DNA of 64,000 nt from Octopus sinensis (GCF_006345805.1 NC_042998.1:134478001-134542000), one strand, 5' to 3'. Positions 15,201 to 62,720 are shown, counted from the first letter of the stretch. Notes: generated by a model from the sequence alone, not told the origin. Translations and numbers: made by a program.

Positions 15201-16870
15201 TTTTTTACTATTTTACTTGTTTCAGTCATGGGACTGTGGCCATGCTGGAGCACCACCATTGGTTGAACAAATCGACCACAGGATTTATTCTTTGTAAGCC
15301 TACTATTTATTCTAACAGTGTCTTTTGCCACACTAAGTTATGGAAATGTAAACGCAGCAACATCAGTTGTCAAAAAATGGGGTACAAACACACACACACA
15401 CACACACAAAATATACGCATATATACGACAGTCTTCTTTCAGTTTCCATGTACAAAATCCACTCACAAGGCTTTTGTCGGCCTGAGGCTTTAATATGTAT
15501 ATGTATATCCACATATATATATAACATTCCACTGGCACGAGTGCCAATCAGGCGGTACTGTTGTTGGCCACATCAGCAATTTAGATTTTGATTTCACTTG
15601 CCTCACTCGGTCTTCACAAGCAAGGTTTATTGTCCAATGAATGAGGGATATATATATAATAATAATAATATTAGGGAGTAAATCCAAACTTACAGGGGAA
15701 AATTAGATTTAAGATTAAATCCAATTTACAGTATAAATATAAATTAAATTAGAGATAAAACCACTATTAGGCAAATCAAACAGGGAAAAACATAAACCAA
15801 AACATAGAAATAAAATTAATTAATATAATATACAAAATATATAAAATATAAAAATCAAAATTTAAATTTAAAATTAGTAATTTATATTTATAAATTTTAA
15901 TATATATATATATATTTGTATTTATTTATTTTTTATTAAATATATATAACTATCAAAAAGTATTAAAAAGTTTAATATAAGATAAAAAGTAAAACCACTA
16001 CGATTGTTTCATGCCCATAACCTAATTCGAATAACAATAATTTAAATTTAATTAATAATTCGAATTATGGTTATAGTCAATCTTCAGGTTAATGATAATA
16101 GTTAAATAAATAATCAAATATATTTAAACAATATTTTTTTAAGAAATAAATAAAATAATAATTTTTCTTATAAAAAACTCTATTATCAAACTAGAAACTT
16201 TAATGATTATGATTATGTCATACAATCGATTATAATGTTAAATATTAATTTTTAAGGTAAGAATAGATAGAAAATGTATTTATCTATTCAGATATAATAT
16301 GGCTTTAAAAAAACATAATAAACTCACAAATAATCTAATCTCAGTCATATATCTAATTACCTAAATGTTTAATAATCAAAAAAAATAATTATATAATATT
16401 TGAATAATAACTAAATTATCAATGAATATATATAAATGTATATAAATATAAGAATTAGGATCTAAACTTATCTCTATCAATAAATATATATGCACGTATA
16501 ATAAAAACCTAATAAATTAATTATTCATTATTACTTATGAAATATATTAAAAATTAAAAGATTAAAGATGAAAAAGCAAATTGTAAACAAACAAACTATC
16601 TTAAAAGAACCCTATAACTAATTAACAATCCATATATCTCGTTGGCTAATTAATAACTTACAAAAACCGTATTGTTAAGAACTAAAATGAAATAATGAAA
16701 TACATATCTTCAACAGCTAAATACTTATACAATGAAATTATCAATCCGTAGTTATATAGTATCCAATAAATACTACGAATATATTATATTAATTAATTTT
16801 ATTTCTATGTTTTGGTTTATGTTTTTCACTGTTTGATTTGCCTAATTGTGGTTTTATCTCTAATTTAATT

Positions 16871-16904
<34 letters not shown>

Positions 16905-17216: not shown

Positions 17217-19917
17217 ATGTATATATATATATATATATTATATATATATATATATATCCCTCATTCATTGGACATTAAACCTTGCTTGTGAAGACCGAGT
17301 GAGGTAAGTGAAATCAAAATCAAAATTGCTGACGTGGCCGACAACAGTACCACCTGATTGGCACTCATGCCAGTGGAACGTTAAAACACATCCAAACGTG
17401 GGGTGTAACTAGCCCACTTATGAGTACCCCTCAGTCATTGGACAATGAACTTTGCTTGCGAAGACCTATTAAGGCAAGTGTAAACAAATCAAAATTACTG
17501 ACGTGGCCGATGACAGTACTGCCTGATTGGCACTCATGCCAGTTGAACATTAAAAGAAGCATATCCAAGCGTGATTGTTGCCAGTGCCATGGATTTGCTC
17601 CCGTGCCAGTGATATGTGAAAAGCATCATTCAAGCGTGATCGTTGCTAACGTTACCTTACTGGCACATGTGCCGGTGGCATGTGAAAAACAACTTTCGAG
17701 TGTGGTCATTGCCACTACTGCCAGAGTGGCTCCCATGCAGGTAGTAAAAACACCTTTTGAGTGTGGTTATTGCCGGAACCACCTGACTGACCCTCATGCT
17801 GGTGGCAAGCACCCACTACACTCTCGGACTGGTTGTCATTAGGAAGGGCATCCAGCTGTAGAAACTTTTACAGATCAGATTGAGCCTGATGCAGCCTTCT
17901 GGCTCATCAGTCCTCAGTCAAACCATCCAACCCATGCCAGCATGGAAAGAGGACATTAAACGATGATGATGATGATGATGATATATATATATATATATAT
18001 ATAAAATATATATATATGTGCTTATACATATACATATATATGTATACATACATATCCATACATAAACATGAATAGATATACATACATACATATATATATA
18101 CATACATATATATGTGTGTGTGTATGTGTGTGTATATATATGTATATATGTGTATATATATGCATGTATATGTATGCATATATATATACATACCTAGCCA
18201 AAGATAAACCTCTGTACCTGGCTTTCGTTGACATGGAGAAAACCTTTGACAGGGTCCCCGAATCCCTTATCTGGTGGTCAATGAGGAAACTAGGGATAGA
18301 TGAATGGTTAGTGAGAGCTGTGCGAGCCATGTACAGGGATGCTGTTAGTAAGGTGAGGGTTGGCAACGAGTACAGTGAAGAATTCCGGGTAGAGGTTGGG
18401 GTCCACCAAGGTTCAGTTCTCAGCCCCCTCCTATTTATCATAGTCCTCCAGGCAATAACGGAGGAATTCAAGACAAGATGCCCTTGGGAGCTCCTCTATG
18501 CTGATGACCTTGCTCTAATTGCTGAGTCACTATCAGAACTGGAGGAAAAGTTTCAGGTGTGGAAGAAAGGATTAGAATCGAAGGGCCTTAGAGTCAACCT
18601 AGCTAAAACCAAAGTTCTAATAAGTAGGAAGGTAGACAAATCACAAACGCCTTCAGGTAGATGGCCCTGCTCGATCTGTAGAAATGGCGTAAGTAGAAAC
18701 TCTATAAGATGCACCAAGTGTAAGCTATGGACACATATGAGGTGCAGCAATGTCAAAGGAAGGCTAACTAGGAAGATAGTTTTTGTATGTAGCAGATGCT
18801 GAGGAGCAATAAACACTGAAAATACGCAGAGACCATCTTCCACCACATTCCAGGGAGAAAAACTAAAAATAGTTGATAGCTTCCGTTACCTAGGTGACCA
18901 AGTCAGTAGCGGGGGCGGGTGTGCTGAAAGTGTAACTGCTAGAGTAAGAATAGCCTGGGCAAAGTTCAGAGAGCTCTTACCTCTGCTGGTGACAAAAGGC
19001 CTCTCGCTCAGAGTAAAAGGCAGATTGTATGATGCATGTGAACGAACAGCCATGCTACATGGCAGTGAAACATGGGCCCAGACTGCTGAGGATATGCGTA
19101 AGCTCACAAGAAATGAAGCCAGTATGCTCCGATGGATGTGTAATGTCAGGGTTCATACTCGACAGAGTGTAAGTACCTTGAGAGAAAAGTTGGACCTAAG
19201 AAGCATCAGTTGTGGTGTGCAAGAGAGACGTTTGTGCTGGTATGGTCATGTGGCGAGAATGGCTGAAGATAGTTGTGTGAAAAAGTGCCACACCCTAGCC
19301 GTTGAGGGAACCTGTAGAAGAGGTAGACCCAGGAAAACCTGGGATGAGGTGGTGAAGCATGACCTCGAATTTAGGTCTCACCGAGGAAATGACTTGAGAC
19401 CGAGATCTTTGGAAGTATGCTGTGCGTGAGAAGACCCGGCAGGACAAGTGAGGCCATAACCCGTGGCCTCTACCTGGGATGTAGCCAGTCCACTTATGCA
19501 TTCCTTTCCTTCTTGGGACACAAAACTTTACTTGTGAAGACATGTTGAGGCAAGTGAAAATCAAAATTGTAATCGATCAACATCAATGGAATTTGTAGCT
19601 GTGATACCAGTGCCGGTGGCACGTAAGAGAACCATCCGAACGTGGCCGTAGCCAGTGTCACCCTGACTGGCCTTCGTGCCGGTGGCACGTAAAAAGCACC
19701 CACTACACTCACGGAGTGGTTGGCATTAGGAAAGGCATCCAGCTGTAGAAACACTGCCAGATCAGACTGGGCCTGGTGCAGCCTTCTGGCTTCCCAGACC
19801 CCAGTTGAACCGTCCAACCCATGCTAGCATGGAAAGCGGACGTTAAACGATGATGATGATGATATACATATATATGTATATGTATATAGATATATATATA
19901 TATAATATATATATAGA

Positions 19918-20649: not shown

Positions 20650-23600
20650 ATTATATATATAATATATATTATATATATGTAATATATATAATATTATATA
20701 TATATTGTTATATATATATATATATATATATATTGTATATATATATATATATATACATATATATTTATATATTATATATATATATATTATAATATATATT
20801 GTATATATATTGTATATATATATATATATAGATATATATATATATATATAGAACATATATATTGTATATATATTATATATATAATATATATATATATATA
20901 ATATATATATATATAATAATAAATATTAGGGAATAAATCCAAATTTACAGGGAAAAAATCAGATTTAGGATTAAATCCAATTTTATAGTAAAATATTATA
21001 AAATATTATTAGAGACAAAATCACTATTTTGCAAAACAAACAAGGAAAGACTTAATCAATACATAAAATTTTAATAAATAGTCAAAAAAAACCGCCACTA
21101 CAATTGTTTCTTGTCTTGATCGACAATCTTCAGGTGGACTTCCAACTAAAATATCAATATTTTAAATATAAAAATAATAATTTTAAAATAATTAAGTATG
21201 AATGAAAAAATATAAATATATAATCATATATAACCTATATATAATCTATATATAATCATATAAAACAATATATAAACTAAAATAAACCTATCAACATTAA
21301 ATATAAAATATAAAAAATATAAAATATAAAATATAAAACAAAAACAAAAATAATAATAATATAATAATAAACTATATAACACCCATACACATATACCTAA
21401 TTATATATAACCATATCTAACTACATACACTAAATCACACCCCTATATATATATCCCTATACATACACATAAAAACGTCTAGGCAACTATAAATAAATAA
21501 AATAGCTAAATACTTCAACACAAATACTTATTCATACTCCCACACACACACATACAACCCACATTCACGCTCTAGAAAAAAAGAAAACGGACTCACTAAA
21601 ATTATGAACGGAGAAATGGAATAAATGGAATTAAAAATTATATTCACTTGGTTAAAACGAACACTACTTAAAAATTATGAATGAAACAATGCGATAAACA
21701 ACAGACATCGCAAATAGACACAAATTACTACGAATTCCTTAACAAACCTATCATGATAAACCAAAACTCATAAAAACATATAATGATAAAATCTCCCATA
21801 CTAAACTCTATAAACATACCTATATAGCAATCCCCCTAACCTAAACATTCACACACAAATACACACACGTAAACCACACACCCACGACATATACAAATAC
21901 CCACCACTTAACCATACCTATACATACATATAAACCTCAACATATACTCCAAAAACCCACTCAACCCCACACAGACAAATAAACACAAAAATTATGAATG
22001 GATTCTTTTATAAAACTACCATGATAAGCTAAAACTCACAAAAACATAAATGATAAAACCTCCCTTTACTAAAACATAAACATATTATATAGCAATCCCT
22101 TTAACCTATACATTCACACACAAATACACACACGTAAACACACACCCATAACAAATACAAACACCCACCCCACTCACACACACCCACAAGTACATATAAG
22201 CCTCAACATATACACCAAACAAATTACTTTACCAAGGAACTTAACATATGTATAAAAAGTATAACCGCTCTGGAAACGAACATCTTTTAAAATAATGAAT
22301 GGAGAAATGGAATAAATGGAATTAAAAATAATATTCACGTGGCAAAACGAACACCACTCAAAAATTATGAATGAAACAATGTAATAAAACAACCAACATC
22401 GAAAATAGACAAATTACCACGAATTCCCTTAAAAAAAACCATGATAAACCAAAACTCTTAAAAACATATAACGATAAAATCTCCTTTGCTAAACTCTATA
22501 ACAAACCTATATAGCAATCCCCCTAACCTAAACATTCACACACAAAAAACACACACGTAAACCACAGACCCACGACTTATACACATACCTATACTAACTT
22601 ATAAACCTCAAATACACCAAAAACCCACTCCCTCCCCACACAGACAAATTAAACACATACATCCCAAAACCTAAAAAAACAAACCCATATACACATTCAC
22701 ACACAAACACACACACACGCAAAACACACAACACAACAGATACATATACTCCCTCACATATACGCATATACATACTCACTAAATCGATATATACAACAAT
22801 ATTTACACACCCACACTCATACAGATAAATAAATATACAACTAAAAACTCACACACAATCTCATACATAAACACTCCAATAAAAACAACATTAAATACAT
22901 CGTAATTAACCAGAATATCAAAAATAACAATATGACATAAGGAGAAATAAAATACATACTTACAAGTCAGTTTCAAATTATGAAGTGAAATTAAATTCTT
23001 AGCCGTTAAAAAAACCAAACCAAAATTACGTTACCATAGAAATATAACTTATGTAAAAAAAAAAAAAAAAGAATACGCGCCATGGAAAGTAAACGTCATT
23101 TAAAATTATGAATGGAGAAATAGAATAAATGGAACTAAAAACTATATCCACGTGGCAAACCAACACTACTTAAACAAAATTTATTATGAATGGATTCTTT
23201 AATAAAACTACCATAATAAATTATTATATACAATTATGAGCTTTAGCTCATCTTAGCAGCTCTAACAAACAATAAAGAATCCATTCATATAAATTTTGTT
23301 TAAGTAGTGTTGGTTGCCACGTGGATATAGTTTTTAGTTCCATTTATTCTATTTCTCCATTCATAATTTTAAATGACGTTTACTTTCCATGGCGCGTATT
23401 CTTTTTTTTTTTTTTTACATAAGTTATATTTCTATGGTAACGTAATTTTGGTTTGGTTTTTTTAACGGCTAAGATTTAATTTCACTTCATAATTTGAAAC
23501 TGACTTGTAAGTATGTATTTTATTTCTCTTATGTCATATTGTTATTTTTGATATTCTGGTTAATTACGATGTATTTAATGTTGTTTTTATTGGAGTGTTT

Positions 23601-25458
23601 ATGTATATGAGATTGTGTGTGAGTTTTTAGTTGTATAATTTATTTATCTGTATGAGTGTGGTGTGTAAATATTGTTGTATATATCGAGTTTAGTGAGTAT
23701 GTATATGCGTATATGTGAGGGAGTATATGTATCTGTTGTGTGTGTGTGTTTTGCGTGTGTGTGTGTTTGTGTGTGAATGTGTATATGGGTTTGTTTTTTA
23801 GGTTTTGGGATGTATGTGTTAATTTGTCTGTGTGGGGAGGGAGTGGGTTTTTGGTGTATATTGAGGTTTATAAGTTAGTATAGGTATGTGTATAAGTCGT
23901 GGGTCTGTGGTTTACGTGTGTGTTTTTTGTGTGTGAATGTTTAGGTTAGGGGGATTGCTATATAGGTTTGTTATAGAGTTTAGCAAAGGGAGATTTTATC
24001 GTTATATGTTTTTAAGAGTTTTGGTTTATCATGGTTTTTTTTAGGGAATTCGTGGTAATTTGTCTATTTTCGATGTTGGTTGTTTTATTACATTGTTTCA
24101 TTCATAATTTTTGAGTGGTGTTCGTTTTGCCACGTGAATATTATTTTTAATTCCATTTATTCCATTTCTCCATTCATTATTTTAAAAGATGTTCGTTTCC
24201 AGAGCGGTTATACTTTTTATACATATGTTAAGTTCCTTGGTAAAGTAATTTTGTTTGGTGTATGTTGAGGCTTATATGTACTTGTGGGTGTGTGTGAGTG
24301 GGGTGGGTGTTTGTATTTGTTATGGGTGTGGTTTACGTGGTGTGTATTTGTGTGTGAATGTATAGGTTAAAGGGATTGCTATATAAGTATGTTATAGTGT
24401 TTAGTAAAGGGAGGTTTTATCATTTATGTTTGTGAGTTTTAGCTTATCATGGTAGTTTTATAAAAGAATCCATTCATAATTTTTGTGTTTATTTGTCTGT
24501 GTGGGGTTGAGTGGGTTTTTGGAGTATATGTTGAGGTTTATATGTATGTATAGGTATGTGTAAGTGGTGTGGGTTTGTATATGTGTGGTGGTGTGTGTTT
24601 ACGTGTGTGTATTTGTGTGTGAATGTTTAGGTTAGGGGGATTGCTATATAGGTATGTTATAGAGTTTAGTAATGGGAGATTTTATCATTATATGTTTTTA
24701 TGAGTTTTGGTTTATCATGATAGGTTTGTTAAGGAATTCGTAGTAATTTGTGTCTATTTGCGATGTCGTTGTTGTTTTATCGCATTGTTTCATTCATAAT
24801 TTTTAAGTAGTGTTCGTTTTACCAAGTGAATATAATTTTTTAATTCCATTTATTCCATTTCTCCGTTCATAATTTTAAGTGATGTCCGTTTTCTAGAGCG
24901 TGAATGTGGGTTGTATGTGTGTGTGTGTGGGAGTATGAATAAGTATTGTGTTGAAGTATTTAGCTATTTTATTTATTTATAGTTGCCTAGACGTTTTTAT
25001 GTGTATGTATAGGGATAATATATAGGGGTGTGATTTAGTGTATGTAGTTAGATATGGTTATATATAATTAGGTATATGTGTATGGGTGTATATATAGGTA
25101 TTATTATATATTATTATTTTTTGTTTTGTTTTATATTTTATATTTTATATTTATATTTTATATTTAATTGTTGATAGGTTTATTTTAGTTATATATTGTT
25201 TATATATTGATTATATATGGATTATATATAGGTTATATATGGATTATATATTATATTTTTTCATTCATACTTTATTATTTTAAAATTATTATTTTTATAT
25301 TTTAAAATATTGATATTTTAGATTGGAAGTCCACCTGAAGATTGTCGATCAAGACAAGAAACAATTGTAGTGGCGGTTTTTTTGACTATTTATTAAAATT
25401 TTATGTATGATTAAGTCTTTCCTTGTTTGTTTGCAAAATAGTGGTTTTGTCTCTAATA

Positions 25459-25528
<70 letters not shown>

Positions 25529-25942
25529 GCATATATATATATTATATATATATATACACTTGCGTCAGAAATTAATTAGCACTTCTCAAATTTCTACATT
25601 AAATAGGTTAAATCAATTAACCTATGAGCTGTTCAAAACGTCTTACGCGATGAGAAAACTTAGTATGGTGTGATTTCGGTCCTTGCGAGGCGCTACCTAT
25701 ATCTATTAAACAAAGGAAGTTTGTCTGCATCCGCACTCCAAGTTGTTGTTGCACTGCTATGTCAAATCATAAGGCTGTAGACTCTCAAACTGCTCTGCAA
25801 ACAAAGTTACGTCATCGTTCTGCGCAACAGTAAACTCGCAACAAAGCAATAGTTCGAGATATGGCCACTAGGTGACAGCACATACCTTGAGTGAAGAGCA
25901 AATCAAGGGTTGCTAATTAATTTCTGACGGTAGTGTACATGC

Positions 25943-28147: not shown

Positions 28148-30503
28148 TATACAAACATATATAAATACATAATGAAGCTAATATAAATGAAACATATATA
28201 TATATATCACCGTGACCGACCAGGCTATCAGATGTTGTTACACATCACTGGTCACAATGCGTTTCGCATTGTTTTAGGCAAGTGTCTTCAAATGACGCCA
28301 CCCCGCTGGCTAAGCAAGCAGGCCAACAGAAGAAAGAATGAGAGTAAGTTGTGGCGAAAGAGTACAGCAGGGATTGCCACCACCCCTACCGGAGCCTCAT
28401 GGAGCTTTAGGTGTTTTCGCTCAATAAACACTCACAACGCTCGGTCTGGGAATCGAAACCGCGATCCTACAACCATGAGTCCGCTGCCCTAACCACTAGG
28501 CCATTGTGCCTCCACACATACATATATATATATAAGGTAAGCTACTTACCACACAGCCACTCCTGTGCCTATATATATAAATATATATATATATATATAA
28601 TAATAAATATTAGGGAATAAATCCAAATTTACAGGGAAAAATCAGATTTAGGATTGAATCCAATTTTATAGAAAAATATAATATAATATTAATTAGAGAC
28701 AAAACCACTATTATGCAAATCAAACAAAGAAAGACTTAATCCAATACATAAAAAATTTTATATAAATTAAATATAATTAAGATATCCACTACGATCGTTT
28801 CTTGTCACTTCTATTGACATTCATCAGGTGGTTTCAAGACCTTCTTTGCCATTTTTAAACTATGAGTTTAAACTATGACTCATAGTTTTAAAATGGCAAA
28901 GAAGGTCTTGAAACCACCTGATGAATGTCAATAGAAGTGACAAGAAACGATCGTAGTGGATATCTTAATTATATTTAATTTATATAAAAATTTTTATGTA
29001 TTGGATTAAGTCTTTCTTTGTTTGATTTGCATAATAGTGGTTTTGTCTCTAATTAATATTATATATATATATATATATATAGGTGCAGGAGTGGCTGTGT
29101 GGTAAGTAGCTTGCTAACCAACCACATGGTTCCGGGTTCAGTCCCACTGCGTAGCATCTTGGGCAAGTGTCTTCTGCTATAGCCCCGGGCCGACCAATGC
29201 CTTGTGAGTGGATTTGGTAGACGGATGCCAGGCAAGGCTGGCAACGGACACGAAAGGGTGGTGCTTTTACGTGCTACCGGCACGGGGGCCAGGTGAGGCT
29301 GGCAACGGACACGAGCGGATGGTGCTTACGTGCCAACGGCACGGGGGCCAGACGAGGCTGGCAATGGACACGAACGGATGGTGCTTTTACATGCTACCGG
29401 CACGGGGGCCAGGCGATGCTGGCAACGGACACGAGCGGATGGTGCTTTTACGTGCTACCGGCACGGGGGCCAGGCGAGGCTGGCAACGGACACGAGCGGA
29501 TGGTGCTTTTATGTGCCAACGGCATGGGGGCCAGGCGGGGCTGGCAACGGACACGAGCGGATGGTGCTTTTACATGCTACTGGCACGGGGGCCAGGCGAG
29601 GCTGGCAACGGACACGAGTGGATGGTGCTTTTACATGCCAATGGCACGGGGGCCAGGCGAGGCTGGCAACGGACACGAGTGGATGGTGCTTTTACATGCC
29701 AATGGCATGGGGGCCAGGCAAGGCTGGCAACGGACATCAGTGGATGGTGCTTTTACATGCCAACGGGACGGTGGCCAGGCGAGGCTGGCAACGGACAAAC
29801 GATCGGATGGTTCGCTTAACCACAGCTGCAATTTCCACTGATGTTGATTTGGTTTGATTTTGACTGTTCTCACTGGTCTACATCCCAGGTAGAGGCCACG
29901 GGTTATGACCTCACTTGTCCTGCCGGGTCTTCTCACGCACAGCATACTTCCATAGGTCTCGGTCTCTAGTCATTTCTTTGGTGAGACCTAAAGTTCGAAG
30001 GTCGTGCTTCACCACCTCGTCCCAGGTTTCCTGGGTCTACCTCTTCCACAGGTTCCCCCAACTGCTAGGGTGTAGCACTTTTTCACACAACTATCTTCAG
30101 CCATTCTCGTCACATGCCCATACCAGCGCAGACGTCTCTCTTGCACACCACAACTGATGCTTCTTAGGTTCAACTTTTCTCTCAAGGTACTTACACTCTG
30201 TCGATTATGAACACTGACATTACACATCCATCGGAGCATACTGGGTTCATTTCTTGCGAGCTTACGCATATCCTCAGCAGTCTGGGCCCATGTTTCACTA
30301 CCATGTAGCATGGCTGTACGTACACATGCATCATACAGTCTGCCTTTTACTCTGAACGAGAGGCCTTTTGTCACCAGCAGAGGTAAGAGCTCTCTGAACT
30401 TTGCCCAGGCTATCCTTACTCTAGCTGTTACACTTTCAGCACATCCACCCCCACTACTGACTTGGTCACCAAGATAACGGAAGCTATCAACTACTTCTAG
30501 TTT

Positions 30504-30542
<39 letters not shown>

Positions 30543-33500
30543 TGAAAGTAATTGAAAACCAATTAATAGTGAAAGTATTATATCACATTACAACAGAGAT
30601 GTTATTGTTTCACTTTTGACAATAAGAGATAAGAGATTGCACTGGGCTCATGACACTCCATGGACCCTAAGTAAAATTTGAATGAAATCTGTTGGGTAGT
30701 TCTCCAGTTTTAGTGATGCGCACATACAGACTGACAGACAGACACACACACTCACACATTCTCAGTTCTATATATATAGATTTGTAGTGTTAACAGTCAA
30801 ACATATTTGGCTGCATTTTATGTGGAATTTTGGGCTGTAAACTTTGATTTGAAAAATTTGACTTGATTACTGGAAAATGTAGATCTTGACAACTTGCTGT
30901 TTTCTGGTTAACTGTTGGATGACATAGACTAGGGGAGTACATTCTAAGAGAACATGAAGCTGCAGCAGTCACTTTGTGGGGGCAGTGTCTGATAGATTCT
31001 CTATAAGTATCACAAAGTAGAAGTAATATATTTTTCCAAGCGGCCGTAGACATTGTAAAATTGACAACTAAGTTCATTAGCTTTCAGTAAGTACTAAGTT
31101 CAACTCTACAGATTGACTTTAATGCTTATCCATATTTGGAACATTACAGTAGACATTCATGCTTATCCATATTTGTATCGTTATATCTGTTTCTAATCTC
31201 AATTAAAGGATTAAAATTGATTAAGTGTTCTTAGAACAAGATAATGAAATAAACAAACAAAACAAAACCAAAACATTTAGTCTCACTTTTCTTTTTCTGA
31301 AAATTTCTTCTTTTGTCTTTTCATTGCAGAAGAAACAGCGTCCTTCATCTAATAAATTTATATCTACCTGTGTGGAGTCTGGTGCCGATAACAAGCTATC
31401 ACTGGATAACATCAACAGCTGTGCTGTTGTGACTAATTCCTGTTTACCTCAGGTGACTCAATGAATTTCCATTATTGGTTTGCTTTTATTATCCACATGA
31501 TGTTGATTTTTCGGTTGTTGTTGTTGTTGTTGTTTAGTTCTAATCATATAAATGATGTAAACCTACATTCACTGGTGTTCCAGCCTAAACCATCTTTTTT
31601 TCTTTCCAGCCGTAGTATTTTTAGGACTATGTTATCTAATGTATACTTTCATTTTTAAGACCCTTCATCATTTCAAGAAATGTAGTTTCTATTTCTCACC
31701 AATCAAGCAACCATGTACAACAATTCTGCCAGTTTACTATGTTAATTATGTGAATTATATACGGTTTCCTTGTTGTAGGAGTGCTGTATAATTCATGTGT
31801 GTTTTATTAGCTTGTAGTTCTGTGTTCAGCTCTTCATGTGGTTGTAGCTTATAAAAGCAACTTGATCAAGTGAATATGGTATTGAGACACCACCTTATAG
31901 ATGGACTACCAACATAGATCTTGTTCAAATCTACTCTATGGGTCTCTTTGTGTATTTGTGTAATTCACTCATTCACATTACTTTGATTTACTTAGTTGTC
32001 AGAAATAGATACTAAATCAGTTACAAGTGTTATCCAAGAGAGACTGATATTCTATCCAGGAGTATTTTAATCTTTTATCTGCTTAATGTGATGAAACTAG
32101 AGCTAAGGCATCAGTCCATAAAAGCCAACTGGTAAATTTACATTTGCATTACATGAATAATATAGGGTCTTCTAGGTTGACATGCTTTACATAAACTACA
32201 TAGAATCCTTATCCCACTAATCAAATGGTTTGTTTGTTTGTTCTCATTTTGTTATAAATTAGTTTGATGAAGTGGGAAAGTTCCTGTGGATTTTTGCTAG
32301 CACTTCTTGGGTGGTAAGAATAGGAGTAACTAAGATGGCATGAATTAAGTTAAATTTGAATCTAGCAGTTAGGTTGGGAGAAAAAACTTGAGTGACAGAT
32401 ATCTAAAAAGATGGTGCCAAGCTGGAGTAAGATGGATTGGTAAAAAGAGGAGGAGATGTGAATTCATTTCATTGCTTTACATCCTGGTTGGTCCTGGTTA
32501 AACATACTTATGATCAAAAGCATTCTAATCATGACCATCTTGCCTGTATTTTCAGAAACATTGTGTCTTGGATTCTACATTATTCAATGTGACTATTAAA
32601 GTGATATGATGGAGATTTTGCTATCAGTTTGAGTGATCACATAGAGCTGGCAACCTTTTTTGAGAAGCAGGCCTCATGAAACATGGTTCATATTAAGGTG
32701 GGCCACACTACTAAAACAATTCATGGTAATTTTACATTAGATATACCATTCAGAGAGTCCTGTAGGCCACAGTTTGTCCATGACTGGCACAGAGGTTTTC
32801 TCATTGGTTTGAGGATTCATTAAATTAATATGTAGGAGTAGTGTGAATAGAGGAAATGCAGGGCAGACATATGTTGTTGATGGATCAAAGATTGTAGAAT
32901 ATTGATGAGTAAAGCAAGGCAGACATATTTTGTTAACTGATTAAAGATTGTAGAATATTGATGAGTAAAAGTCTTTCTATCAAGTGACTAACTTTGTTTG
33001 TACATTGTTTAGAAAATATCTGTATGACAGAATGTGTGATGAATAATCTTTCCAGATGTAGGAGCTATACTTGAGTGTAGACTATCACTTAGACTATACA
33101 ATGTCCTGTGTGTGAATTCTATCTTAGCCCTGAAGAGTTTTTTAAGGACTGGTACTTAGTCCAGAGTTTCATGGTATTGAACAGGCAAGTGAGAAATATT
33201 TCCATGGATAGGACCACAGTCTTTCACTGATAACTTTACCAGGTTCTCTGATATCTGTTCCTGACTGTTGAATGTACTGAATCATTGCATGTATGTATGT
33301 GCATTCATGCACAAATATTCATATTTACTTACAGAATTAGTACTTTTTGGTAAATATTTTTAAAAAATCAATTTTATATTTTTAATTTGTATCTGCTCTC
33401 TATAAGACACCTGTTTCTGAACCTCTGTTACACTCAAACTTCTCATCACCCGGCACAGGGCCACCTTCTCTAGTACATCACCCCCTCAAGGGATCTTTGT

Positions 33501-42085: not shown

Positions 42086-44284
42086 TATGTCCCAGTGATG
42101 AGAAAATCTACAAGAATCCTCATAACTACAACTTTTACATGAAGGACTGGTCCTTCTCTTTTCTTTTTTTTTTTTTTTATACTTTTTCATAACTGACTGC
42201 TATGTCAAACTGAAGAGGGAGGCAACAGCTAAAATAAAAAGCTAGTCACCAACTATTAAAATTTTCCCTGATTTCCCTTGCTCTATCACTTTTTCTTTTT
42301 TTATAACACCCTTTCATTCTCCATTCTTTTTCATTGTACATCCTTTTCATTCGCTTTGTCTCTCTCTTGTTCTCTACCTCTGTCCCTTTGTTTTTTATTA
42401 CTCATCTGTCTTATCTGATCTCATATATATATATATATATATACATATATATATACATATATATATATGTGTGTGTGTGTATCTTATTTTACATTTTTTC
42501 ATAAATATTTATCTCTTAATTCTGCAATATATTATTGAAACAGGAACATCTAAAACAAATAATAAAGAATGTGATAGTTTCCATTAATTATCATTTTGTA
42601 AATGATATCTTGGTCATTATATTTTTAAAATAAGATCATCTTCATTTTAGTTATGAATGTTACAGCTACAGTGCTTGATTCTCATAAAAAAAATTAGCTC
42701 CAAACAAAATTCGATTCTTGAGTTACAACCACTTATTTTCATTAATGTTATTATATCCTTGAGAAACACAAACATCACAACTTCTCATTACCTTTCTATA
42801 AATTTGAGGTTTCATATATGGAAAACTCATCTTTAAGTGTTTAATCAAGTTATAATATGGAAGACTTGTGATTTTGCCTTTTTTTTATTTCTTTTTGCTG
42901 TTATTTTTTTATTGGTTTATATACTGACATTTTGAAGAAATCAAAATGAGAAATTCAATTTTTTTATATTTTTATAATAAAGTTACTGGTTGATGATTAC
43001 CTGAATATCATAGTATTTTCTTGTTTACATACAAACTGAGAATTGTTATTGTTATTATGTTGTCCTCTACATTAACAGTGCCAGAACAGAGATTTTGTTG
43101 ATAAGATGCTCTCTAAGGAGAGGTTTGTCTAAAGTAATCTAATAGGTAATGAAACTTCAAGCTAATACTTTCTAATATTGTAGTATTCCTGCTACTTGTG
43201 ACTTGGGATTGGACCCTATTAACAACTAGGTAGAATTAATGTAAAATAAGATCTTGACTCTGAACACAATTTAGAGCCAGTGAAGGGATCTAAGCCATTT
43301 TCACTTTAACCAGCTGCATAATAATTACTTGATAAACTTATCTCTATGAAGTGCTGTGTGTATTTATGCTTTATCAAAGATAATGTAGCAGGTTACATGA
43401 TTTTGCATTTCATCGGTGATATCTTGTCACTTGAAATGAGTTTACTATTATGAGGGCAATTGCATCAGTCTTAAATCTCAAGGCAGCATGTTGTACAATA
43501 AAAATGGCTTGGTCATAACTAAATTGCCTATTAGGTAATGAAGCTTGATACAGGTCAGCATATAGTCTTTCTCTAGCAAAAATTCCTGCTCAAAACATTA
43601 GGCTTCTCCTTGCCCTTACAGCAACCTAACTTATTCTCCTTTGTAAACTTTTTATATTCCCTATTTGCCAATACAAACTGACTATCACTAGATTCCTTGG
43701 ATTCTACTGTTTCACTTAGCTGTGTGTGTTAAGTTACATAGCTTAGTGGTTAGGGTTTTGATCCTGGTTTTGATTCCTAGATCAGAAGTCCATTACAATC
43801 TTGAGCAAAACATTTCATTTCATGTTACTCCAGTCCACTCAGCTGTAGTGATTAATAAAAATTCTCATATCTTCCATCTGTGTCTCATTAACCAAATTTA
43901 TATATAGAGAGCGGGGGGAGATTAGGATAAACTTATTTGGAAATGGATGTGTGGTGTTCAATCAAATAATAATATAAATAATATATATATATGCACATAT
44001 ATATATACTTATGCATATCCAACGACTGATGAAGGGTCGTTCTTTGTGTTACTTGTCTTGTTTTCCATTTGTTTCTCTCGTTTGCGTATTGAACTCATTT
44101 GTTGCCGTATTTGATGTTGTATATGTGTATATATATATATTACAAGCTTACTTGCTAATTGTGACACCAGCACTTGTTTTGGTACTGATGGGAAAATGAA
44201 TCACCGCTATCTGTAGTGGTCAAAACAGAACGTCCATGTTTAAGTGGGGATAAATATTACCTCTTGATATATATTCCATTCTCA

Positions 44285-44885
44285 GCAGAGTGACTCGTCA
44301 GCAACTAAAGAAAGACTTTGAGGCATACCGGATGGAGAAGTTCTTGAATGCTGCAGAGGAAAAGAAGAGCCTCAAGAAATGCAAGAGGGACGTGGTACTA
44401 TATAGATCGGAGGTGACGGCCCTGAAGAATACAGATAGAATACTGGTCAACGAGAAGAGCGAGATGGAAAAAGTTTGCGAAGACTTCTACACCAAGCTCT
44501 TTAAGTCTACCAGAAATGTCCAGCCGTTACCACCACTCCAATAGGAAGAAAACGTACCACCTATCCTTGTCAGTGAGGTTGAAAGAGCCATCGGCTCGAT
44601 GAAAAACGGAAAGGCGCCAGGGAAAGATGGTATAACATCGGAGGTGCTAAAGTCAGGTAGAGAGCAGCTCTGGAAAATCCTCGCTGAACGATCTACGCAC
44701 TATCTAGACGAGGGAAGAATTCCCTCGCAGTGGAAAGAGTCAAATACCATCCTGCTGTATAAGAAGGGCAACAGAGAAGATCTAAAGAACTACCGACCCA
44801 TATGCCTGCTGTCTCACGTCTATAAGCTGTTCACAAAGATAATTCTGAACAGGTTATCATGTCGTCTCAACGAACAACAACTGAG
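44285..44885 (+). mobile_element. Internal fragment of a different RTE-clade LINE (pre-RT and RT N-terminus)
   Basis: MKNGKAPGKDGIT, WKESNTILLYKKG, KNYRPICLLSHVYKLFTKII motifs; one in-frame stop. Confidence 0.85.
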
Positions 44886-45291
44886 GGAACACTTATTTCA
44901 CTTTAAAAACATCTCTGATGTCTTTTAGAAATGCAGTATATTTGCCTTTGTTTCATATACTGCTAATGTTCTCCAGCTGAATATGAATGTCACTCATTTC
45001 TCACTGCCATCATTTATAAATTTGTGATTTTTTAACTGAGTAAAAAGTCTAGTATTTTCATCACCTGATACATATAATTGATAATCCTTAATAAAATTAA
45101 AATGTCAGTCAGACTGCCATAAAATCCAAAATATAACCTAGGAATTCTTTCTGATAGACGTTTAACAATTTGACTGACTGTTCCTATTTCATCTTAGATA
45201 TTCTTTAATTTACATTTTTTGACCATCAAAACCATTTTAATTAAAATTCTATAGATTGACACAAAACCATTAATTTTTTTTGTTTGGAGTA

Positions 45292-45322
<31 letters not shown>

Positions 45323-46549
45323 TTGTGTATTTGAAACCAAAGGAATGAAAGAAAAAGTAAACTTTGACAGGTATTGAACTCAGAACACTGAGGTAAGAGA
45401 AAAATTAATATAAAGCCTTTAGTCTAGCACTCTACTATTTCTTCCATTCCACTGCTCTGAATAACAATAAGCTGCTTTATTAGAAGCCTATTGATTCTAG
45501 CATATATTACATTTTGAAAATAGAAGTGCTGAAAATATGTTATGGTGACTTCCTGGCATGTCTCAGTCTGCAACTGTTTCTATTTTCAGTTACCTATTCT
45601 GCTAATGTCATTGAGGAATGATATGATCATCACAACTTCCTATTTGTCATTCTTTGAATAAAATTCTGTTTTGTTATTTTTCTAAAATAAAGATATAAAT
45701 GTTTGTCATTTGTCCTTTTAATTATTTTATATTACTTTTTCTCTATCTTGTGTTATTGGTTTTGCAAATTGTCAGAACAAGTAACTTCAAAGAATCATGC
45801 TCGTCCTATGATCAATGAAGTGGGAATAAAATCTTTCAGCCAAGCAGTCTGAGGTTAGCACAGTTGTGTAGATTGACTAGGAACACAATACAAAGTTTCT
45901 AATTAGATTAGCATTTTTTAATTAAAACAGGAAGTGATCTTAGGGTTTACCCCTGGATACACTTTTTGTCTAGAGTATCTATTGAATAATTTCATTCTAC
46001 ATTTGTCAATCTTTAGACAGATGTTCAACATCAATAACGATTATATTTAGTTTCTGCAGATTTATTTCAGCACCCTGTTGTATTCTTTCCATTTTTTGTT
46101 ATGTGAGATACGTGACTAGATTACATGTCTAATTCAATTCACTTAGAAAACTCTTATATCACAACTGGAGTTTTTATAAATTGAGTAGTGACATCAGCAA
46201 AAATCTAGTCAATGATATTATATGTAAACAACTGCTGGTTGTTTGAAGGATGATATCACCATGGATCTGTCCAGTTAGATTTGCTGTGAAGCATATAAAG
46301 GAAACTAGTTCTGAAATGACAGAGCTTCACAGGCAGCAGCGTGAATGTCAGGGGTTTAGTGTTGTAAGCTATAGAGTGTAATAGCTGGTAAATTCTTACA
46401 TTTGGCAAAGTTTCCACAGTTATGAATGTCAAAATGCTGTGTTGTAAAAAGAACCATCTGCATTGACGCTAGCACAGCCATATTCTTGTTTTTTTTCTTT
46501 CTTAAGACCTTCTACTGCTATGAAGAGAACTGATATTACTTTTTCTTTT

Positions 46550-47503
46550 CTTGGAACTGTTGCATTCCATACAAACAGTTCATAATGACATAGATGCCAA
46601 TTTAAAGAATGCCACAGTATTGAAATATGCAGACGACATCAACCTGTACCTTGAAATCAAGAGGACTGATCCTGATGTCTACAACTCTTTCCTGCAATCA
46701 GACCTAGACACAATGCAGCAATGGATCACAGACTGGCAACTGAAACTGGCTGTGGACAAGTGAACCACCATGCATTTTGGGAGAAAAAACCCTGCGTCCA
46801 CATACTCCCTCCACAACACTGATATCAAGAAATCCTCTTGCGAGCGTGACCTAGGCATCATTGTCAGCAGTGATTTGCATTGGACAAAGCATATCTCTAA
46901 AATTGTCAAGAAGGCCGAGGGTGTCTTGGCATCACTCAGCAAGACTTTTGTTAGCCGCTCTCCAGCCATCTATTTAAAACTGTATACAGCTATGGTACGA
47001 CCGCACTTGGAATTCGCATCATCAGTTTGGAATCCCTATCTTGCTCAGAACATTGACCTCCTGGAATCTGTCCAGAGACGTGCAACCAAACGCATACCCT
47101 CCATCAGACACCTACCATATTCTGAGCGCCTTGTTTCCCTGGGCATGGATTCACTGAAGCTCCGGCGTCTGGCGACGGACTTGGTAAACACCCACAAGGT
47201 TATCAACCACCTCACCAACAACAACACTGAACACCTTTTTGATCTCCATGTGTCTAACACACGTGGACATGCCTACAAAGTCAGAAAACAACACAGCTCC
47301 CATGACTTTCGGAAACATTTTTTCACGCTCAGAGTTGCTGAAGCATGGAATAAACTGCCTGCGTCAGTTGTTGACTGCCATGACACTGCATCCTTTAAGG
47401 CCCTCATGCTTTCCGAAATCCGCCGAAACTACACCTGATTATATATACACTTTAGATGAGTTGTAGTGCACCTGAGCACTGTACACAATTATTATTATTA
47501 TTA
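46550..47503 (+). mobile_element. CR1/L2-group LINE 3' end with (TTA)n tail
   Basis: KYADD, RDLGIIVSSDL, VRPHLEFASSVWNP, LESVQRRATK, TRGH, FFTLRV..AWNKLP motifs. One stop at 46761-46763. 3' hairpin GTGC-ACCTGA-GCAC, then ATTATTATT. Confidence 0.9.
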
Positions 47504-49075: not shown

Positions 49076-49359
49076 TAAAGGAAAAATTTAGGTGAAAGGA
49101 GGACAAAAATATTTTTAATAAAATTTCTCATTTTTTCACAAAACTAATCTTTCTCATTGAAAGCTAAAATCTGAAGGAAAGATAAAATCAGTCTCATTCA
49201 AAACTCAGAACATAGAACCATGTCACTAAGCATTTCATCCAGTACAATAATGATTCTACCAGACCAATAATAATATATCTGCAATGTCAGTTTTGACAGC
49301 ACCAGCTGGCAATAAGCTAAACTACTTGTTAAATTCAGTGGCCTTGGCCCCTGTTCTGG

Positions 49360-50389
49360 ATGACTACTGCAACCATATCCAAAATTTCCCCTACACATCC
49401 ATTAAACGAAAAATTTATCCTAACCTCAACAATCTAGAATGGAAAAATCTGACTGAACTAAAAAACGACACAGACCTGACAATTAAAGAAGCTGACAAAG
49501 GAAGTGCTGTAGTTCTGATGGACACAGAACACTATAAAAAACTAGTTATTTCCATATCAGAAAACGAGGCCTTCTACGAAAATATTATAAACTATAAACA
49601 ACAAAAAACAATGAAAAATCTTGCATCCTTAATTCTTCTACATAGAAAAGGCCTGACAGAAAAAGAAACAGACTACATCACGAACTTCAAATGTAAACCC
49701 AGTCTTTTTTATGGCCTCCCTAAAATACACAAGAGCAAGATAATCAATGAAGCCTGCAAACAATCACCAGGCAAATATATAAACATCCAAACGCCAGAAG
49801 ACTTGACTTTAAGACTCATTGTAGCTGGGCCAGCCTGTGAAACCCACCGACTAAGCAATTTTCTAGACATCCTACTGAAACCCTTGCTGAAATACATCAA
49901 AAGCTTCATTGGGGATGATCTAGACATGCTAGAACACCTACCAAAAACGATTAATGAAGAGGCAGTATTGGTCACCCTCGATGTTATCAATCTTTATACC
50001 AACATCCCCCATGACTATGGAATAAATACAATTAAATTCCATTCACGATTACATCACTGTACATAAATCCCCTACTAAACAAGGTCTTTTTTAAAACTTG
50101 TCTCTTTTCTGTACACATATTTATTCCCCACACATTACCGAAACCTGAACAGTTATCTCCCTTACTCACAACAATAACAATAATAACAACCAACTACCTC
50201 CCTTTATTTGTCTACTTGTGAAGCCATTCACTCGTGAATTTCATCACACACAACATGGACCAAATTTCTTCTTAAGAAAAAATATATATTCAAATAAATT
50301 AAACATAATATCATGAATAGCGATAGCGAAACCAGTCGATATATTAAAAATTATATTAAAATCATGTAAGTGTGCGTATTTTCCTTTTA

Positions 50390-55600: not shown

Positions 55601-55765
55601 ACGAGATGGTAGAGCGATTCCACCGTCAACTGAAGACAGCTTTTCGTGCATCACCAGATCCACTAAGATGGACCGAGTACCTTCCCATCGTCCGTTTGGG
55701 TTGTTGGTCCTCTGTGAAAGCAGATCTGGGCTATTATTCGGCCGAATTACTCTATGGCACCCACA
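52665..55765 (+). mobile_element. Decayed Gypsy/Ty3 LTR-retrotransposon internal region (gag end, protease, RT, RNase H, integrase); no LTRs recognised
   Basis: FMVDTGSS (protease); DYRRLN, FSKLDLVRAYQQI, MPFGL, with the YxDD site degraded to NIDN (RT); TVDAS, FTDHK (RNase H); HSLSHPG, TTSYHPASNEMVERFHRQLK (integrase). Many stops and frameshifts. Confidence 0.92.
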
Positions 55766-62031: not shown

Positions 62032-62720
62032 TATGAGGTTTGATGAATAGGTGTCTGGACTGGTGCTATAAAAACAAAACTACAACATGTACCAATTTGG
62101 CATTTAATCTCCTTCAAAGTAGTCCCCTTCAGAGACCACATACTTAATCCAGTGCTGTTTCCATTGATGGAAGTATTCCTGGAACTTGTTTTCTGGGATA
62201 ATCAGCAAATGCCTCATCGCATTCAGTTTGATTTCGTTGACATCCTGAAATCTTCCTTTCAAACGGGATTTGATTTTTGGAAATAGGAAAAAGTCACAAG
62301 GGGCAAGATCTGGGGAATATGGTGGCTGTCGGACCTGGGGAATGCTGTGTCTAGCCAAAAACTGCTGCACAATTGCACCATGACAACACAATGGGCAGGT
62401 GTGTTGTCATGGTGCAATTGCCACTCACCGGATGCATGCAATTGTGACGTTTTCTGGCGAATACCATCCCACAAACGCCACAGAATATTACGGTAGTACT
62501 CTTTGTTTACCGTCTCACCAGGTGGAGCATACTTATGATGAACAATCCCCTTGTAGTTGAAGAAAACAGTCAACAGTATCTTCACATTACTTTAGTCTCA
62601 GAAGTTGGGGTCTTCCACTGTGAAGGCTGAGCCTTCATTTTGGGGTTAGAGCCATAGATCCATCACCTATTATGACTGTTTTCCAAAAAGTTTTCATCGT
62701 TCTTGACACCAGTGGTAGCT
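62032..62720 (-). pseudogene. Mariner transposase C-terminal half (DDD domain) and 3' end
   Basis: KILLTVFF..KGIVHH, WQLHHDNTPAH, PYSPDLAPCDFFLFPKIK, GDYFEGD*; frameshifted. Confidence 0.88.

What the first reader, a model, noticed from the sequence alone, without database searches (positions are those of the whole stretch)
25331..25373. Compact intronic hammerhead with a palindromic stem III, in the sense of the host pre-mRNA
Seen: CCAC-CUGAAGA-UUGUC(GAUCAA)GACAA-GAAA-C(AAUU)G-UA|GUGG has a complete catalytic core. Stem II closes with U-A rather than the usual G-C, and stem III is a single C-G pair around a self-complementary tetraloop (CAAUUG). Established: Penelope-associated minimal hammerheads use palindromic loop III sequences to cleave as dimers. 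Inference: on the + strand it lies in intron 1 of the C10orf143-like gene and could cut the nascent pre-mRNA.
Basis: partly seen in the sequence, partly recalled or inferred. Interest (0 to 1): 0.72.

Follow-up and report, generated by a model that had tools for sequence, protein, structure and literature searches.

The report
Transposon-borne minimal hammerhead ribozyme in octopus
The motif is a real, complete hammerhead ribozyme core, but it is one of five copies carried on both strands by a Penelope-like retrotransposon remnant in an octopus genome. It is an ordinary member of a known class and shows no sign of being a device of the host gene.

Summary
The sequence at 25331-25373(+) is exactly as described: a type I minimal hammerhead with a full core, a 4-bp stem I, a 5-bp stem II closed by U-A, and a helix III that forms an 8-nt palindrome (ACAAUUGU).

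It is not chance. A strict descriptor finds four copies in the window and none in 300 simulated windows.

It is also not unique. There is an identical mirror copy at 21095-21137(-), a variant pair at 28786-28831(-) and 28914-28959(+) whose loop is GAUC (still palindromic), and a decayed copy at 15995-16091(-).

All copies lie about 100 nt from the end of ORF-less elements. These elements are inserted head-to-head in (AT)n microsatellites and carry an extra ~83 nt at one end only, which is the published insertion signature of Penelope-like elements (PLEs). True RT+GIY-YIG PLEs fetched from Octopus sinensis and Argonauta hians carry analogous hammerheads in the same position and arrangement.

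Cofolding predicts textbook double hammerheads for A+A and B+B, but not for A+B.

The Penelope/dimer reading is supported. The "intronic, cuts host pre-mRNA" reading is not: gene context could not be tested, and read-through RNA would bury the ribozyme in a perfect hairpin.

Verdict: new member of a known kind, with modest interest.

The parts
25331..25373 (+). Minimal type I hammerhead, copy A(+) (the finding). Stem I 25331-25334/25370-25373; core CUGAAGA 25335-25341; stem II hairpin 25342-25357; GAA 25358-25360; palindrome ACAAUUGU 25361-25368; A17 25369; predicted cut 25369|25370.
25374..25468 (+). 3' tail of copy A(+). Ends ...GGTTTTGTCTCTAATAATATTTTATA and is followed by an (AT)n microsatellite at about 25469-25560. 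80% identical to the tail of family B.
23273..25330 (+). Non-coding body of the right arm, upstream of the hammerhead. Has no ORF of 80 aa or more and contains degenerate internal direct repeats (for example 23815-24206 matches 24484-24900 at 83.5%).
23202..23272 (.). Asymmetric spacer of about 70 nt at the centre of the 4.4-kb palindrome.
20998..23201 (-). Left arm, the mirror image of 23273-25468. The arms differ by about 13 substitutions and about 60 mostly one-base indels outside the centre.
21095..21137 (-). Hammerhead copy A(-), 43/43 identical to the finding. Predicted cut between 21099 and 21098 on the minus strand.
20915..20997 (-). One-sided terminal extension ('ext', about 83 nt) beyond the end of the minus-strand copy only, bordered by (AT)n. 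95% identical to the extension of family B.
   Evidence: (D12)
28914..28959 (+). Hammerhead copy B(+): CCAC CUGAUGA A-UGUCA-AUAGAAG-UGACA-A GAAA C GAUC G UA GUGG. Positions 10.1/11.1 are A/A and loop III is GAUC, so ACGAUCGU is an 8-nt palindrome.
28786..28831 (-). Hammerhead copy B(-), identical to B(+).
28681..29064 (.). Small head-to-head palindrome B. Arms 28681-28867 and 28878-29064 are 99% complementary with a 10-nt spacer. Each arm is 36 nt + hammerhead + about 105-nt tail, and (AT)n follows 29064.
   Evidence: (I4)
28599..28680 (-). One-sided extension of element B, on the left side only.
15995..16091 (-). Decayed hammerhead copy C(-). CUGAAGA core; long interrupted stem II; GAAA; loop III CAAUCG (not palindromic, one step between AAUU and GAUC); stem I reduced to 2 contiguous pairs.
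   Evidence: read directly
15658..15829 (-). Tail (15737-15829) and one-sided extension (15658-15736) of element C. A mirrored tail remnant on the plus strand lies at 16783-16880.
   Evidence: (I14)

Best explanation
The motif is the terminal hammerhead of an ORF-less retroelement of the Penelope-like (PLE) kind, in an octopus genome.

Shown:
- The window holds three insertion units (A, B and the decayed C).
- Each unit is a head-to-head pair of 5'-truncated copies sitting in an (AT)n microsatellite.
- Each copy ends about 100 nt downstream of a minimal type I hammerhead.
- An extra ~83 nt is present at one outer end only.

Inferred mechanism:
- In element RNA the single ribozyme is nearly inert, because helix III is only 2 bp.
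- Two RNAs of the same subfamily, or two sense copies on one transcript, pair their 8-nt palindromes (ACAAUUGU or ACGAUCGU). This builds a double hammerhead with stem I formed in trans.
- Each active site then cuts after A17 (25369|25370 here), leaving 2',3'-cyclic phosphate and 5'-OH ends.
- This would trim or unit-size element transcripts. Published data leave its necessity for transposition open.
- The copy at 25331 is a dead-on-arrival, 5'-truncated insertion. Its orientation relative to any host gene is incidental.
- The palindromic form probably arose at integration, either by snap-back or template switch of the RT, or by priming on both cleaved DNA strands. The one-sided extension would reflect the two alternative RT start sites described for PLEs.
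For: 1. The core and helices are complete, with four intact copies against 0 in 300 simulations.
2. Loop III changes AAUU to GAUC between subfamilies. Both changes preserve the palindrome, although the monomer hairpin does not need it. Copy C (AAUC) is the one-step intermediate.
3. The cofold minimum for A+A is -22.0 kcal/mol against 2 x -6.5, and for B+B -22.8 against 2 x -7.3. Both minima are the double hammerhead. A+B reaches -16.9 and is not hammerhead-shaped.
4. Architecture: the arms of A and B end at the same ...GTCTCTAAT(T)AATATT site next to (AT)n, and all three units carry the extension on one side only.
5. The literature describes the same features: inverted 5'-truncated copies, a tail at one end only, (TA)n targets and hammerheads in pLTRs (PMC8557442); min-HHR pairs on opposite strands 100-700 bp apart (PMC4209133); two RT start sites that explain the tail, cleavage and extension of both DNA strands, and a hammerhead cut site 85-92 nt upstream of the RT start (PMC11167929).
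6. Argonauta hians locus L007 has an RVT_1+GIY-YIG ORF flanked by 887-nt inverted repeats. Each repeat carries a min-HHR about 89 nt from its outer end, borders (AT)n, and there is a 35-nt extension on one side only.
7. There are 8 such hammerheads in 259 kb of octopod PLE-RT loci against 0.03 expected. One is an O. bimaculoides head-to-head pair (L012) with the same CUGAAGA-UUG...AA-GAAA layout and compensatory changes in stems I and II and in loop III.
8. A PLE-type RT fragment lies in the window itself, at 49311-50039.
Against: - None of the five copies is attached to an RT/EN ORF.
- BLAST found no nucleotide homology between these elements and the 3' ends of the sampled PLEs. The autonomous partner is therefore unidentified, and PLE membership rests on architecture and analogy.
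- The extension is ~83 nt, longer than the published 30-40 bp.
- G10.1-C11.1, called highly conserved in PLE min-HHRs, is replaced by U-A, A/A or U/U. This may reduce or abolish activity.
- There is no tandem sense copy for dimerisation in cis.
- Rfam hammerhead models give no hit even at E up to 10. They also miss the hammerheads beside bona fide PLEs, so this is weak evidence.
- Published PLE min-HHRs cleave poorly in vitro. In Anolis the hammerhead was dispensable for insertion in vitro and left no RNA-seq ends.
- No cleavage data exist for this sequence.
Confidence: 0.75

Rival explanations
1. The motif is a catalytically dead relic. It derives from a transposon hammerhead, but this lineage, lacking G10.1-C11.1 and having only a 4-bp open stem I, no longer cleaves, even as a dimer. 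The conservation seen would reflect only recent copying.
For: - Positions 10.1/11.1 are U-A, A/A or U/U in the three variants. PMC4209133 lists G10.1-C11.1 as highly conserved.
- The A arms and B arms are near-identical because they are young, so they say nothing about selection.
- PLE min-HHRs cleave weakly in vitro and left no RNA ends in Anolis.
Against: - Subfamilies A and B are only about 80% identical in the flanking tail. They still keep all 13 core positions, both stems and a palindromic loop III through a double substitution.
- The O. bimaculoides relative keeps the same layout with compensatory changes.
- Non-G-C pairs at 10.1/11.1 recur in hammerheads next to bona fide octopod PLEs. 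This looks like a lineage trait rather than decay.
Confidence: 0.25
2. The motif is a domesticated intronic ribozyme. The plus-strand copy lies in an intron in the sense of a host gene and cleaves the nascent pre-mRNA to regulate it.
For: - Precedent exists in the conserved intronic hammerheads of amniotes (PMC6155905).
- The motif is intact on the plus strand.
Against: - No host exon or gene could be identified.
- The motif is multi-copy, lies on both strands and sits inside young transposon palindromes.
- Read-through RNA would sequester it in a long perfect hairpin.
- The monomer fold is not favoured, and no compatible sense partner is nearby.
- Rfam HH9/HH10 give no match.
- In Xenopus, related retrozymes are depleted from introns.
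Confidence: 0.04
3. The palindromes are not PLE insertions. They are either foldback or MITE-like DNA transposons whose long inverted terminal repeats happen to contain a hammerhead, or long-read assembly artefacts.
For: - Palindromes A and B have equal-length, near-perfect arms.
- The arm differences in A are mostly 1-nt indels, typical of long-read error.
- Craig et al. note that such structures trouble assemblies.
Against: - Arms of very different length (187 nt and about 2.2 kb) stop at the same element terminus.
- The extension is on one side in all three units.
- There is a 70-nt asymmetric spacer rather than a clean turnaround.
- The same head-to-head arrangement occurs around a real RT+GIY-YIG ORF in Argonauta, and in a different assembly of O. 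bimaculoides.
- The hammerhead observation does not depend on the palindrome.
Confidence: 0.08

Closest known systems
Minimal hammerheads of Penelope-like elements (Cervera & de la Pena 2014, PMC4209133; Lunse, Weinberg & Breaker 2017, cited in PMC6765202)
   Same: - Type I topology with a short open stem I (4 bp) and no loop-loop tertiary motif.
- Helix III reduced to 2 bp, with a palindromic 15.x-16.x stretch implying dimeric action.
- Multi-copy, including pairs on opposite strands a few hundred bp apart.
- Located near the element terminus.
   Different: - G10.1-C11.1 is replaced by U-A, A/A or U/U.
- Stem II is 5-6 bp rather than 7-8 bp.
- The copies here carry no RT/EN ORF and are arranged only head-to-head, never in the direct pLTR-ORF-pLTR form.
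- The host is a cephalopod, for which the paper library holds no hammerhead report.
Canonical EN+ PLE insertions (Penelope/Poseidon/Neptune; Craig et al. 2021, PMC8557442; Frangieh et al. 2024, PMC11167929)
   Same: - An inverted 5'-truncated copy abutting the main copy.
- An optional terminal extension at one end only.
- (TA)n microsatellite targets.
- A hammerhead about 90-100 nt upstream of the insertion's 3' end.
   Different: - No coding capacity.
- The extension is ~83 nt against 30-40 bp.
- Arms are of equal length (perfect palindromes), not a short inverted stub next to a full copy.
Metazoan non-LTR retrozymes (Cervera & de la Pena 2020, PMC7229834; bioRxiv 10.64898/2026.07.22.740005)
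   Same: Non-autonomous, AT-rich, hammerhead-bearing and probably dependent on PLEs. Some of their hammerheads also act as dimers.
   Different: Retrozymes are direct tandem repeats of roughly 170-400 bp with canonical hammerheads, expressed as circular RNAs. Here there are no direct tandems, and circular RNA was not assessed.
Amniote intronic hammerheads HH9/HH10 (RECK, CTCL)
   Same: Type I hammerhead that may lie within a transcribed gene region.
   Different: HH9/HH10 are single-copy and ultraconserved with tertiary contacts. This motif is young, multi-copy transposon cargo, and the Rfam HH9/HH10 models do not match it.

Membership tests
Hammerhead ribozyme (type I) | Conserved core C3 U4 G5 A6 N7 G8 A9 / G12 A13 A14 / A15.1-U16.1 / H17 | tested here: met
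   All 13 positions are present in copies A and B.
Hammerhead ribozyme (type I) | Three helices around the core, with open ends at stem I | tested here: met
   Stem I is 4 bp, stem II 5 bp, and helix III 2 bp as a monomer or 8 bp as a dimer.
Hammerhead ribozyme (type I) | G10.1-C11.1 closing pair of stem II | tested here: not met
   U-A in copy A, A/A in copy B and U/U in copy C.
Hammerhead ribozyme (type I) | Match to the curated covariance models (Rfam Hammerhead_1, Hammerhead_3, Hammerhead_II, HH9, HH10) | tested here: not met
   No hit at gathering score or at E up to 10. The models also miss hammerheads beside bona fide PLE ORFs, so this test is uninformative for the minimal class.
Hammerhead ribozyme (type I) | Site-specific self-cleavage after position 17 | not testable with these tools
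   Requires in vitro transcription or mapping of RNA ends.
PLE-associated minimal (dimeric) hammerhead | Helix III absent or 1-2 bp, with a self-complementary 15.x-16.x stretch | tested here: met
   ACAAUUGU and ACGAUCGU are both perfect 8-nt palindromes, kept through a double change. The cofold minimum is the double hammerhead.
PLE-associated minimal (dimeric) hammerhead | Short stem I (4-5 bp) without a defined loop 1, and a relatively long stem II | tested here: met
   Stem I is 4 bp and the next pair is a mismatch. Stem II is 5-6 bp, somewhat shorter than the published 7-8 bp.
PLE-associated minimal (dimeric) hammerhead | An unpaired nucleotide between A9 and 10.1, followed by G10.1-C11.1 | tested here: inconclusive
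   A variable nucleotide follows A9 (U, A or U), but it is matched by an extra nucleotide before G12. The next pair is U-A, not G-C.
PLE-associated minimal (dimeric) hammerhead | Location in the terminal repeat of an element that encodes RT + GIY-YIG | tested here: inconclusive
   There is no ORF in these copies and no nucleotide homology to the sampled PLE ends. The architecture is nevertheless the same as the Argonauta RT+GIY-YIG element and the published PLE signatures.
PLE-associated minimal (dimeric) hammerhead | Families of many copies per genome with covariation | tested here: inconclusive
   The window holds five copies in three variants. Related designs occur in O. bimaculoides. A whole-genome census was not possible.
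Metazoan non-LTR retrozyme | Direct tandem repeats of a ~170-400 bp unit, each with a hammerhead | tested here: not met
   Only inverted pairs are present, and no direct repeat contains the motif.
Domesticated intronic hammerhead (HH9/HH10-like) | Single-copy, orthologously conserved, in the sense orientation within an intron | tested here: not met
   The motif is multi-copy on both strands within transposon palindromes. The intron and the host gene could not be verified. Orthology could not be tested.

The most novel reading that the evidence does not exclude
Octopods may harbour a lineage of ORF-less parasites of Penelope-like elements with three linked properties. Their minimal hammerheads have dispensed with the G10.1-C11.1 pair yet still cleave. 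They use subfamily-specific palindromic 'dimerisation codes' (AAUU, GAUC, UAUA), so that only RNAs of the same subfamily activate each other. They integrate as snap-back palindromes, so read-through transcripts are long perfect dsRNA hairpins. In an animal with very active ADAR editing and small-RNA pathways, those hairpins could matter to the host.
Probability: 0.15. Interest if true: 0.55.

Novelty: new member of a known kind. Interest (0 to 1): 0.3.

Why it matters
It adds cephalopods to the animals in which Penelope-type minimal hammerheads can be shown, and it gives a clean natural experiment for the dimer model. Two subfamilies 3.5 kb apart differ by a compensatory double change in the loop that only the dimer needs.

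It also documents non-G-C 10.1/11.1 variants that recur across octopod PLE hammerheads, and equal-armed palindromic insertions that bear on how PLEs integrate.

For genome annotation, the lesson is that an intact hammerhead inside a gene region of an invertebrate should first be checked for being transposon cargo. It does not open a long-standing question.

Tried and rejected
- Rfam. The whole window at gathering score and 25200-25500 at E up to 10 gave nothing. The models also miss hammerheads beside true PLE ORFs, so the negative result was set aside.
- Monomer fold. MFE is -8.2 kcal/mol with z = +0.54, and the fold is not hammerhead-shaped. This fits a motif that works only as a dimer.
- Metagenome pattern scan. 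It returned only two chance matches in a coding repeat, so it yielded no relatives.
- BLAST of the element unit, tail, extension and 2-kb arm against 262 kb held from the fetched loci (259 kb of it octopod). Only microsatellite or weak matches appeared. The autonomous partner was not found.
- MAFFT alignment of the window copies with the Argonauta copies showed no nucleotide homology beyond the motif.
- MAFFT alignment of six PLE-linked hammerheads misaligned the 3' halves because stem II length varies. I therefore dropped the plan to build a covariance model from non-window sequences.
- Host gene search. ORF lists, Pfam and a repeat-masked ORF catalogue gave no recognisable host exon. A concatenated-ORF database search was judged not worth its cost.
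- Lunse et al. 2017 is not held in the library.
- Covariation counts across descriptor-selected sequences were not used as independent evidence, because the descriptor itself demands pairing.

Full report
**1. The observation**

The sequence at 25331-25373(+) reads CCAC CUGAAGA UUGUC GAUCAA GACAA GAAA C AAUU G UA GUGG. In standard hammerhead numbering every invariant position is present: C3-A9, G12-A14, A15.1-U16.1 and A17.

Stem I is 4 bp and cannot be extended. Stem II is 5 bp and closes with U10.1-A11.1. Helix III is A15.1-U16.1 plus C15.2-G16.2 around AAUU, so the eight nucleotides ACAAUUGU are a perfect palindrome.

The two core boxes at a suitable spacing are not rare in this window (40 matches, 16 +/- 11 expected). 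A descriptor that also demands the three helices is rare. It gives four hits in the window and none in 300 simulated windows. A 22-base version found only two chance matches in 241 million metagenome records, both inside a coding repeat.

**2. It is not alone**

The four hits are:
- the finding itself;
- an identical copy on the other strand at 21095-21137;
- a pair at 28786-28831(-) and 28914-28959(+), reading CCAC CUGAUGA A-UGUCA-AUAGAAG-UGACA-A GAAA C GAUC G UA GUGG.

A fifth, decayed copy lies at 15995-16091(-). It has a long interrupted stem II, a weakened stem I and loop III CAAUCG.

Variants A and B are about 80% identical in the adjoining tail. They keep the whole core, stem I and stem II. 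Their loop III differs by two substitutions (AAUU to GAUC) that together preserve the palindrome. The monomer hairpin does not need a palindromic loop; only a dimer does. Copy C carries the one-step intermediate.

**3. Folding**

- As a monomer the RNA is no more stable than shuffled sequence (z = +0.54).
- The hammerhead fold (-5.4 kcal/mol) is not the minimum (-6.5).
- Two A molecules cofold to -22.0 kcal/mol and two B molecules to -22.8. In both cases the minimum-energy structure is the classical double hammerhead: an intermolecular 8-bp helix III, stem II hairpins, and stem I formed in trans.
- The A+B pair reaches only -16.9 kcal/mol and is not hammerhead-shaped.

**4. What carries it**

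The finding sits in the right arm of a 4.4-kb palindrome. The arms are about 20998-23201 and 23273-25468, with a ~70-nt asymmetric spacer. They differ by about 13 substitutions and about 60 mostly single-base indels outside the centre.

The B pair forms a small palindrome, with 187-nt arms 99% complementary and a 10-nt spacer.

Despite the tenfold difference in arm length, the arms of A and B stop at the same place. This is ...GGTTTTGTCTCTAAT(T)AATATT, about 100 nt after the cut site, abutting (AT)n.

In all three units an extra ~83 nt continues beyond that point on the left (minus-strand) copy only: 20915-20997, 28599-28680 and 15658-15736. This extension is 95% identical between A and B, whereas the tails are 80% identical.

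The arms contain no ORF of 80 aa or more. They do contain degenerate internal direct repeats.

**5. Whose genome, and which element class**

A reverse-transcriptase fragment at 49311-50039(+) is 90-92% identical to Octopus sinensis proteins. The window is therefore octopus DNA. The species is not proven, because these are paralogous copies.

Using those proteins I fetched 259 kb around related genes in O. sinensis, O. bimaculoides and Argonauta hians.

Two loci hold intact ORFs with RVT_1 plus GIY-YIG, the defining pair of endonuclease-positive Penelope-like elements.

The Argonauta element (L007) is flanked by 887-nt inverted repeats at 99% identity. Each repeat carries a minimal hammerhead (CUGAUGA U-ACAAA...UUUGU-U GAAA CUAG UU) about 89 nt from its outer end. 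The repeats border (AT)n, and a 35-nt extension is present on the inverted side only. That is the architecture of the window's units, with an ORF in the middle.

Further hammerheads with a palindromic helix III lie at these positions:
- about 1.1-1.3 kb upstream of, and inverted to, RT coding sequence in L009 and at a second site in L007;
- downstream of the full-length O. sinensis ORF in L002;
- as a head-to-head pair in O. bimaculoides (L012).

The L012 sequence is GAAC CUGAAGA UUGCA UAAA UGCAA GAAA G UAUA C UA GUUC. It has the same layout as copy A, including U10.1-A11.1, with compensatory changes in stems I and II and in loop III.

Eight such motifs occur in these loci against 0.03 expected.

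**6. Fit to the literature**

- Cervera and de la Pena (PMC4209133) described minimal type I hammerheads in PLE terminal repeats. These have a short stem I, a vestigial palindromic helix III and dimeric action, cleave weakly in vitro, and include pairs on opposite strands 100-700 bp apart.
- Craig et al. (PMC8557442) describe PLE insertions with an inverted 5'-truncated copy at the 5' end, a tail at one end only, and a bias for (TA)n.
- Frangieh et al. (PMC11167929) show that a PLE protein cleaves and extends both DNA strands and starts reverse transcription at two internal sites, which explains the optional tail. In their element the hammerhead cut site is 85-92 nt upstream of those starts, matching the 89-108 nt seen here. 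They also found that the hammerhead was dispensable for insertion in vitro and left no RNA-seq ends.
- The library holds no report of a hammerhead in octopus.

**7. Interpretation**

The best-supported reading is that the motif is the terminal hammerhead of a non-autonomous or truncated Penelope-type retroelement. It would be competent, if at all, only as a homodimer with RNA of its own subfamily.

Membership in the PLE class is argued from architecture and from analogy with neighbouring bona fide elements. It is not argued from sequence homology to an autonomous partner, which I did not find.

Deviations from the published consensus are the missing G10.1-C11.1 pair (a tested feature, not met), the longer extension and the equal-armed palindromes. 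The equal arms suggest a snap-back or template-switch event at integration. That is inference.

**8. The host-gene idea**

I could not find any host exon or confirm a 'C10orf143-like' gene. The region from about 14 kb to 31 kb is a nest of LINE, SINE-like and tandem-repeat sequence.

Whatever the gene context, one copy of each head-to-head pair is sense to any transcript. A read-through RNA would pair the ribozyme with its upstream antisense copy. The B palindrome folds into a perfect hairpin of -291 kcal/mol with z = -45.

The only other plus-strand copy has an incompatible loop. The claim that this copy cuts the pre-mRNA is therefore unsupported, though not formally excluded.

**9. Verdict**

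- The Penelope/dimer interpretation is supported.
- The intronic regulatory inference is not supported.
- This is a new member of a known kind, of modest interest.

The points worth a bench test are whether hammerheads without G10.1-C11.1 cleave, and whether loop III acts as a subfamily-specific dimerisation code.

Noticed in passing
window 49311-50039 (+): N-terminal fragment of a Penelope-type reverse transcriptase (motifs FYGLPKIHK and DVINLYTNIPH). It is 90-92% identical to Octopus sinensis 'uncharacterized' proteins and ends abruptly after the early RT motifs. No hammerhead lies next to it.
   Followed up: partly
window 18005-19426 (+) and 30009-30587 (-): LINE-type RT with a PHD finger (Pfam RVT_1 and PHD), plus an inverted partial copy that is 94% complementary over 478 nt. 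The two bracket the hammerhead-bearing units.
   Followed up: partly
window 29221-29858: Array of about 10 copies of a 61-nt G+C-rich tandem repeat, preceded at about 29085-29220 by a tRNA-like SINE-looking sequence (GGTGCAGGAGTGGCTGTGTGGTAAG...GGTTCAGTCCCACTG). Similar repeat-derived ORFs recur elsewhere in the window.
   Followed up: no
window 20915-20997 vs 28599-28680: The one-sided ~83-nt extension is 95% identical between elements A and B, whereas the adjacent tail is 80% identical. This could reflect a constrained RT start or recognition region, or recombination between subfamilies. It is unexplained.
   Followed up: partly
window 20998-25468: The two 2.2-kb arms differ mainly by about 60 mostly single-base indels, against about 13 substitutions. 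This looks like uncorrected long-read error, so the arms may be identical in the animal.
   Followed up: partly
window 53059-55836 (+): Frameshifted pol region of an LTR retrotransposon. Pfam RVT_1 matches 53683-54189. The protease-like, RNase H-like and integrase-like stretches were read from the ORF translations only.
   Followed up: no
window 44254-47435 (+); 62107-62591 (-): A second LINE RT remnant (weak Pfam RVT_1 hit on 44545-44925 only, below Pfam's cut-off) and ORFs that look like mariner-type transposase remnants. No Pfam hit was found for 62107-62406, so that call is by eye.
   Followed up: no
L002 13213-13257 (+): In a full-length O. sinensis PLE there is a possible U3-A8 covariant-core hammerhead: AUUU UUGAUAA A-GUUC...GAAC-C GAAA CAUG UA AAAU. 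It lies 0.6 kb after the RT+GIY-YIG ORF and about 65 nt before an (AT)n tract. In such AT-rich sequence it could be a chance match.
   Followed up: partly
L012 70-110 (-) and 482-522 (+): In the O. bimaculoides head-to-head pair, the two copies share sequence only from about 4 nt upstream of stem I. The 370 nt between them are not palindromic, unlike the window's units.
   Followed up: no
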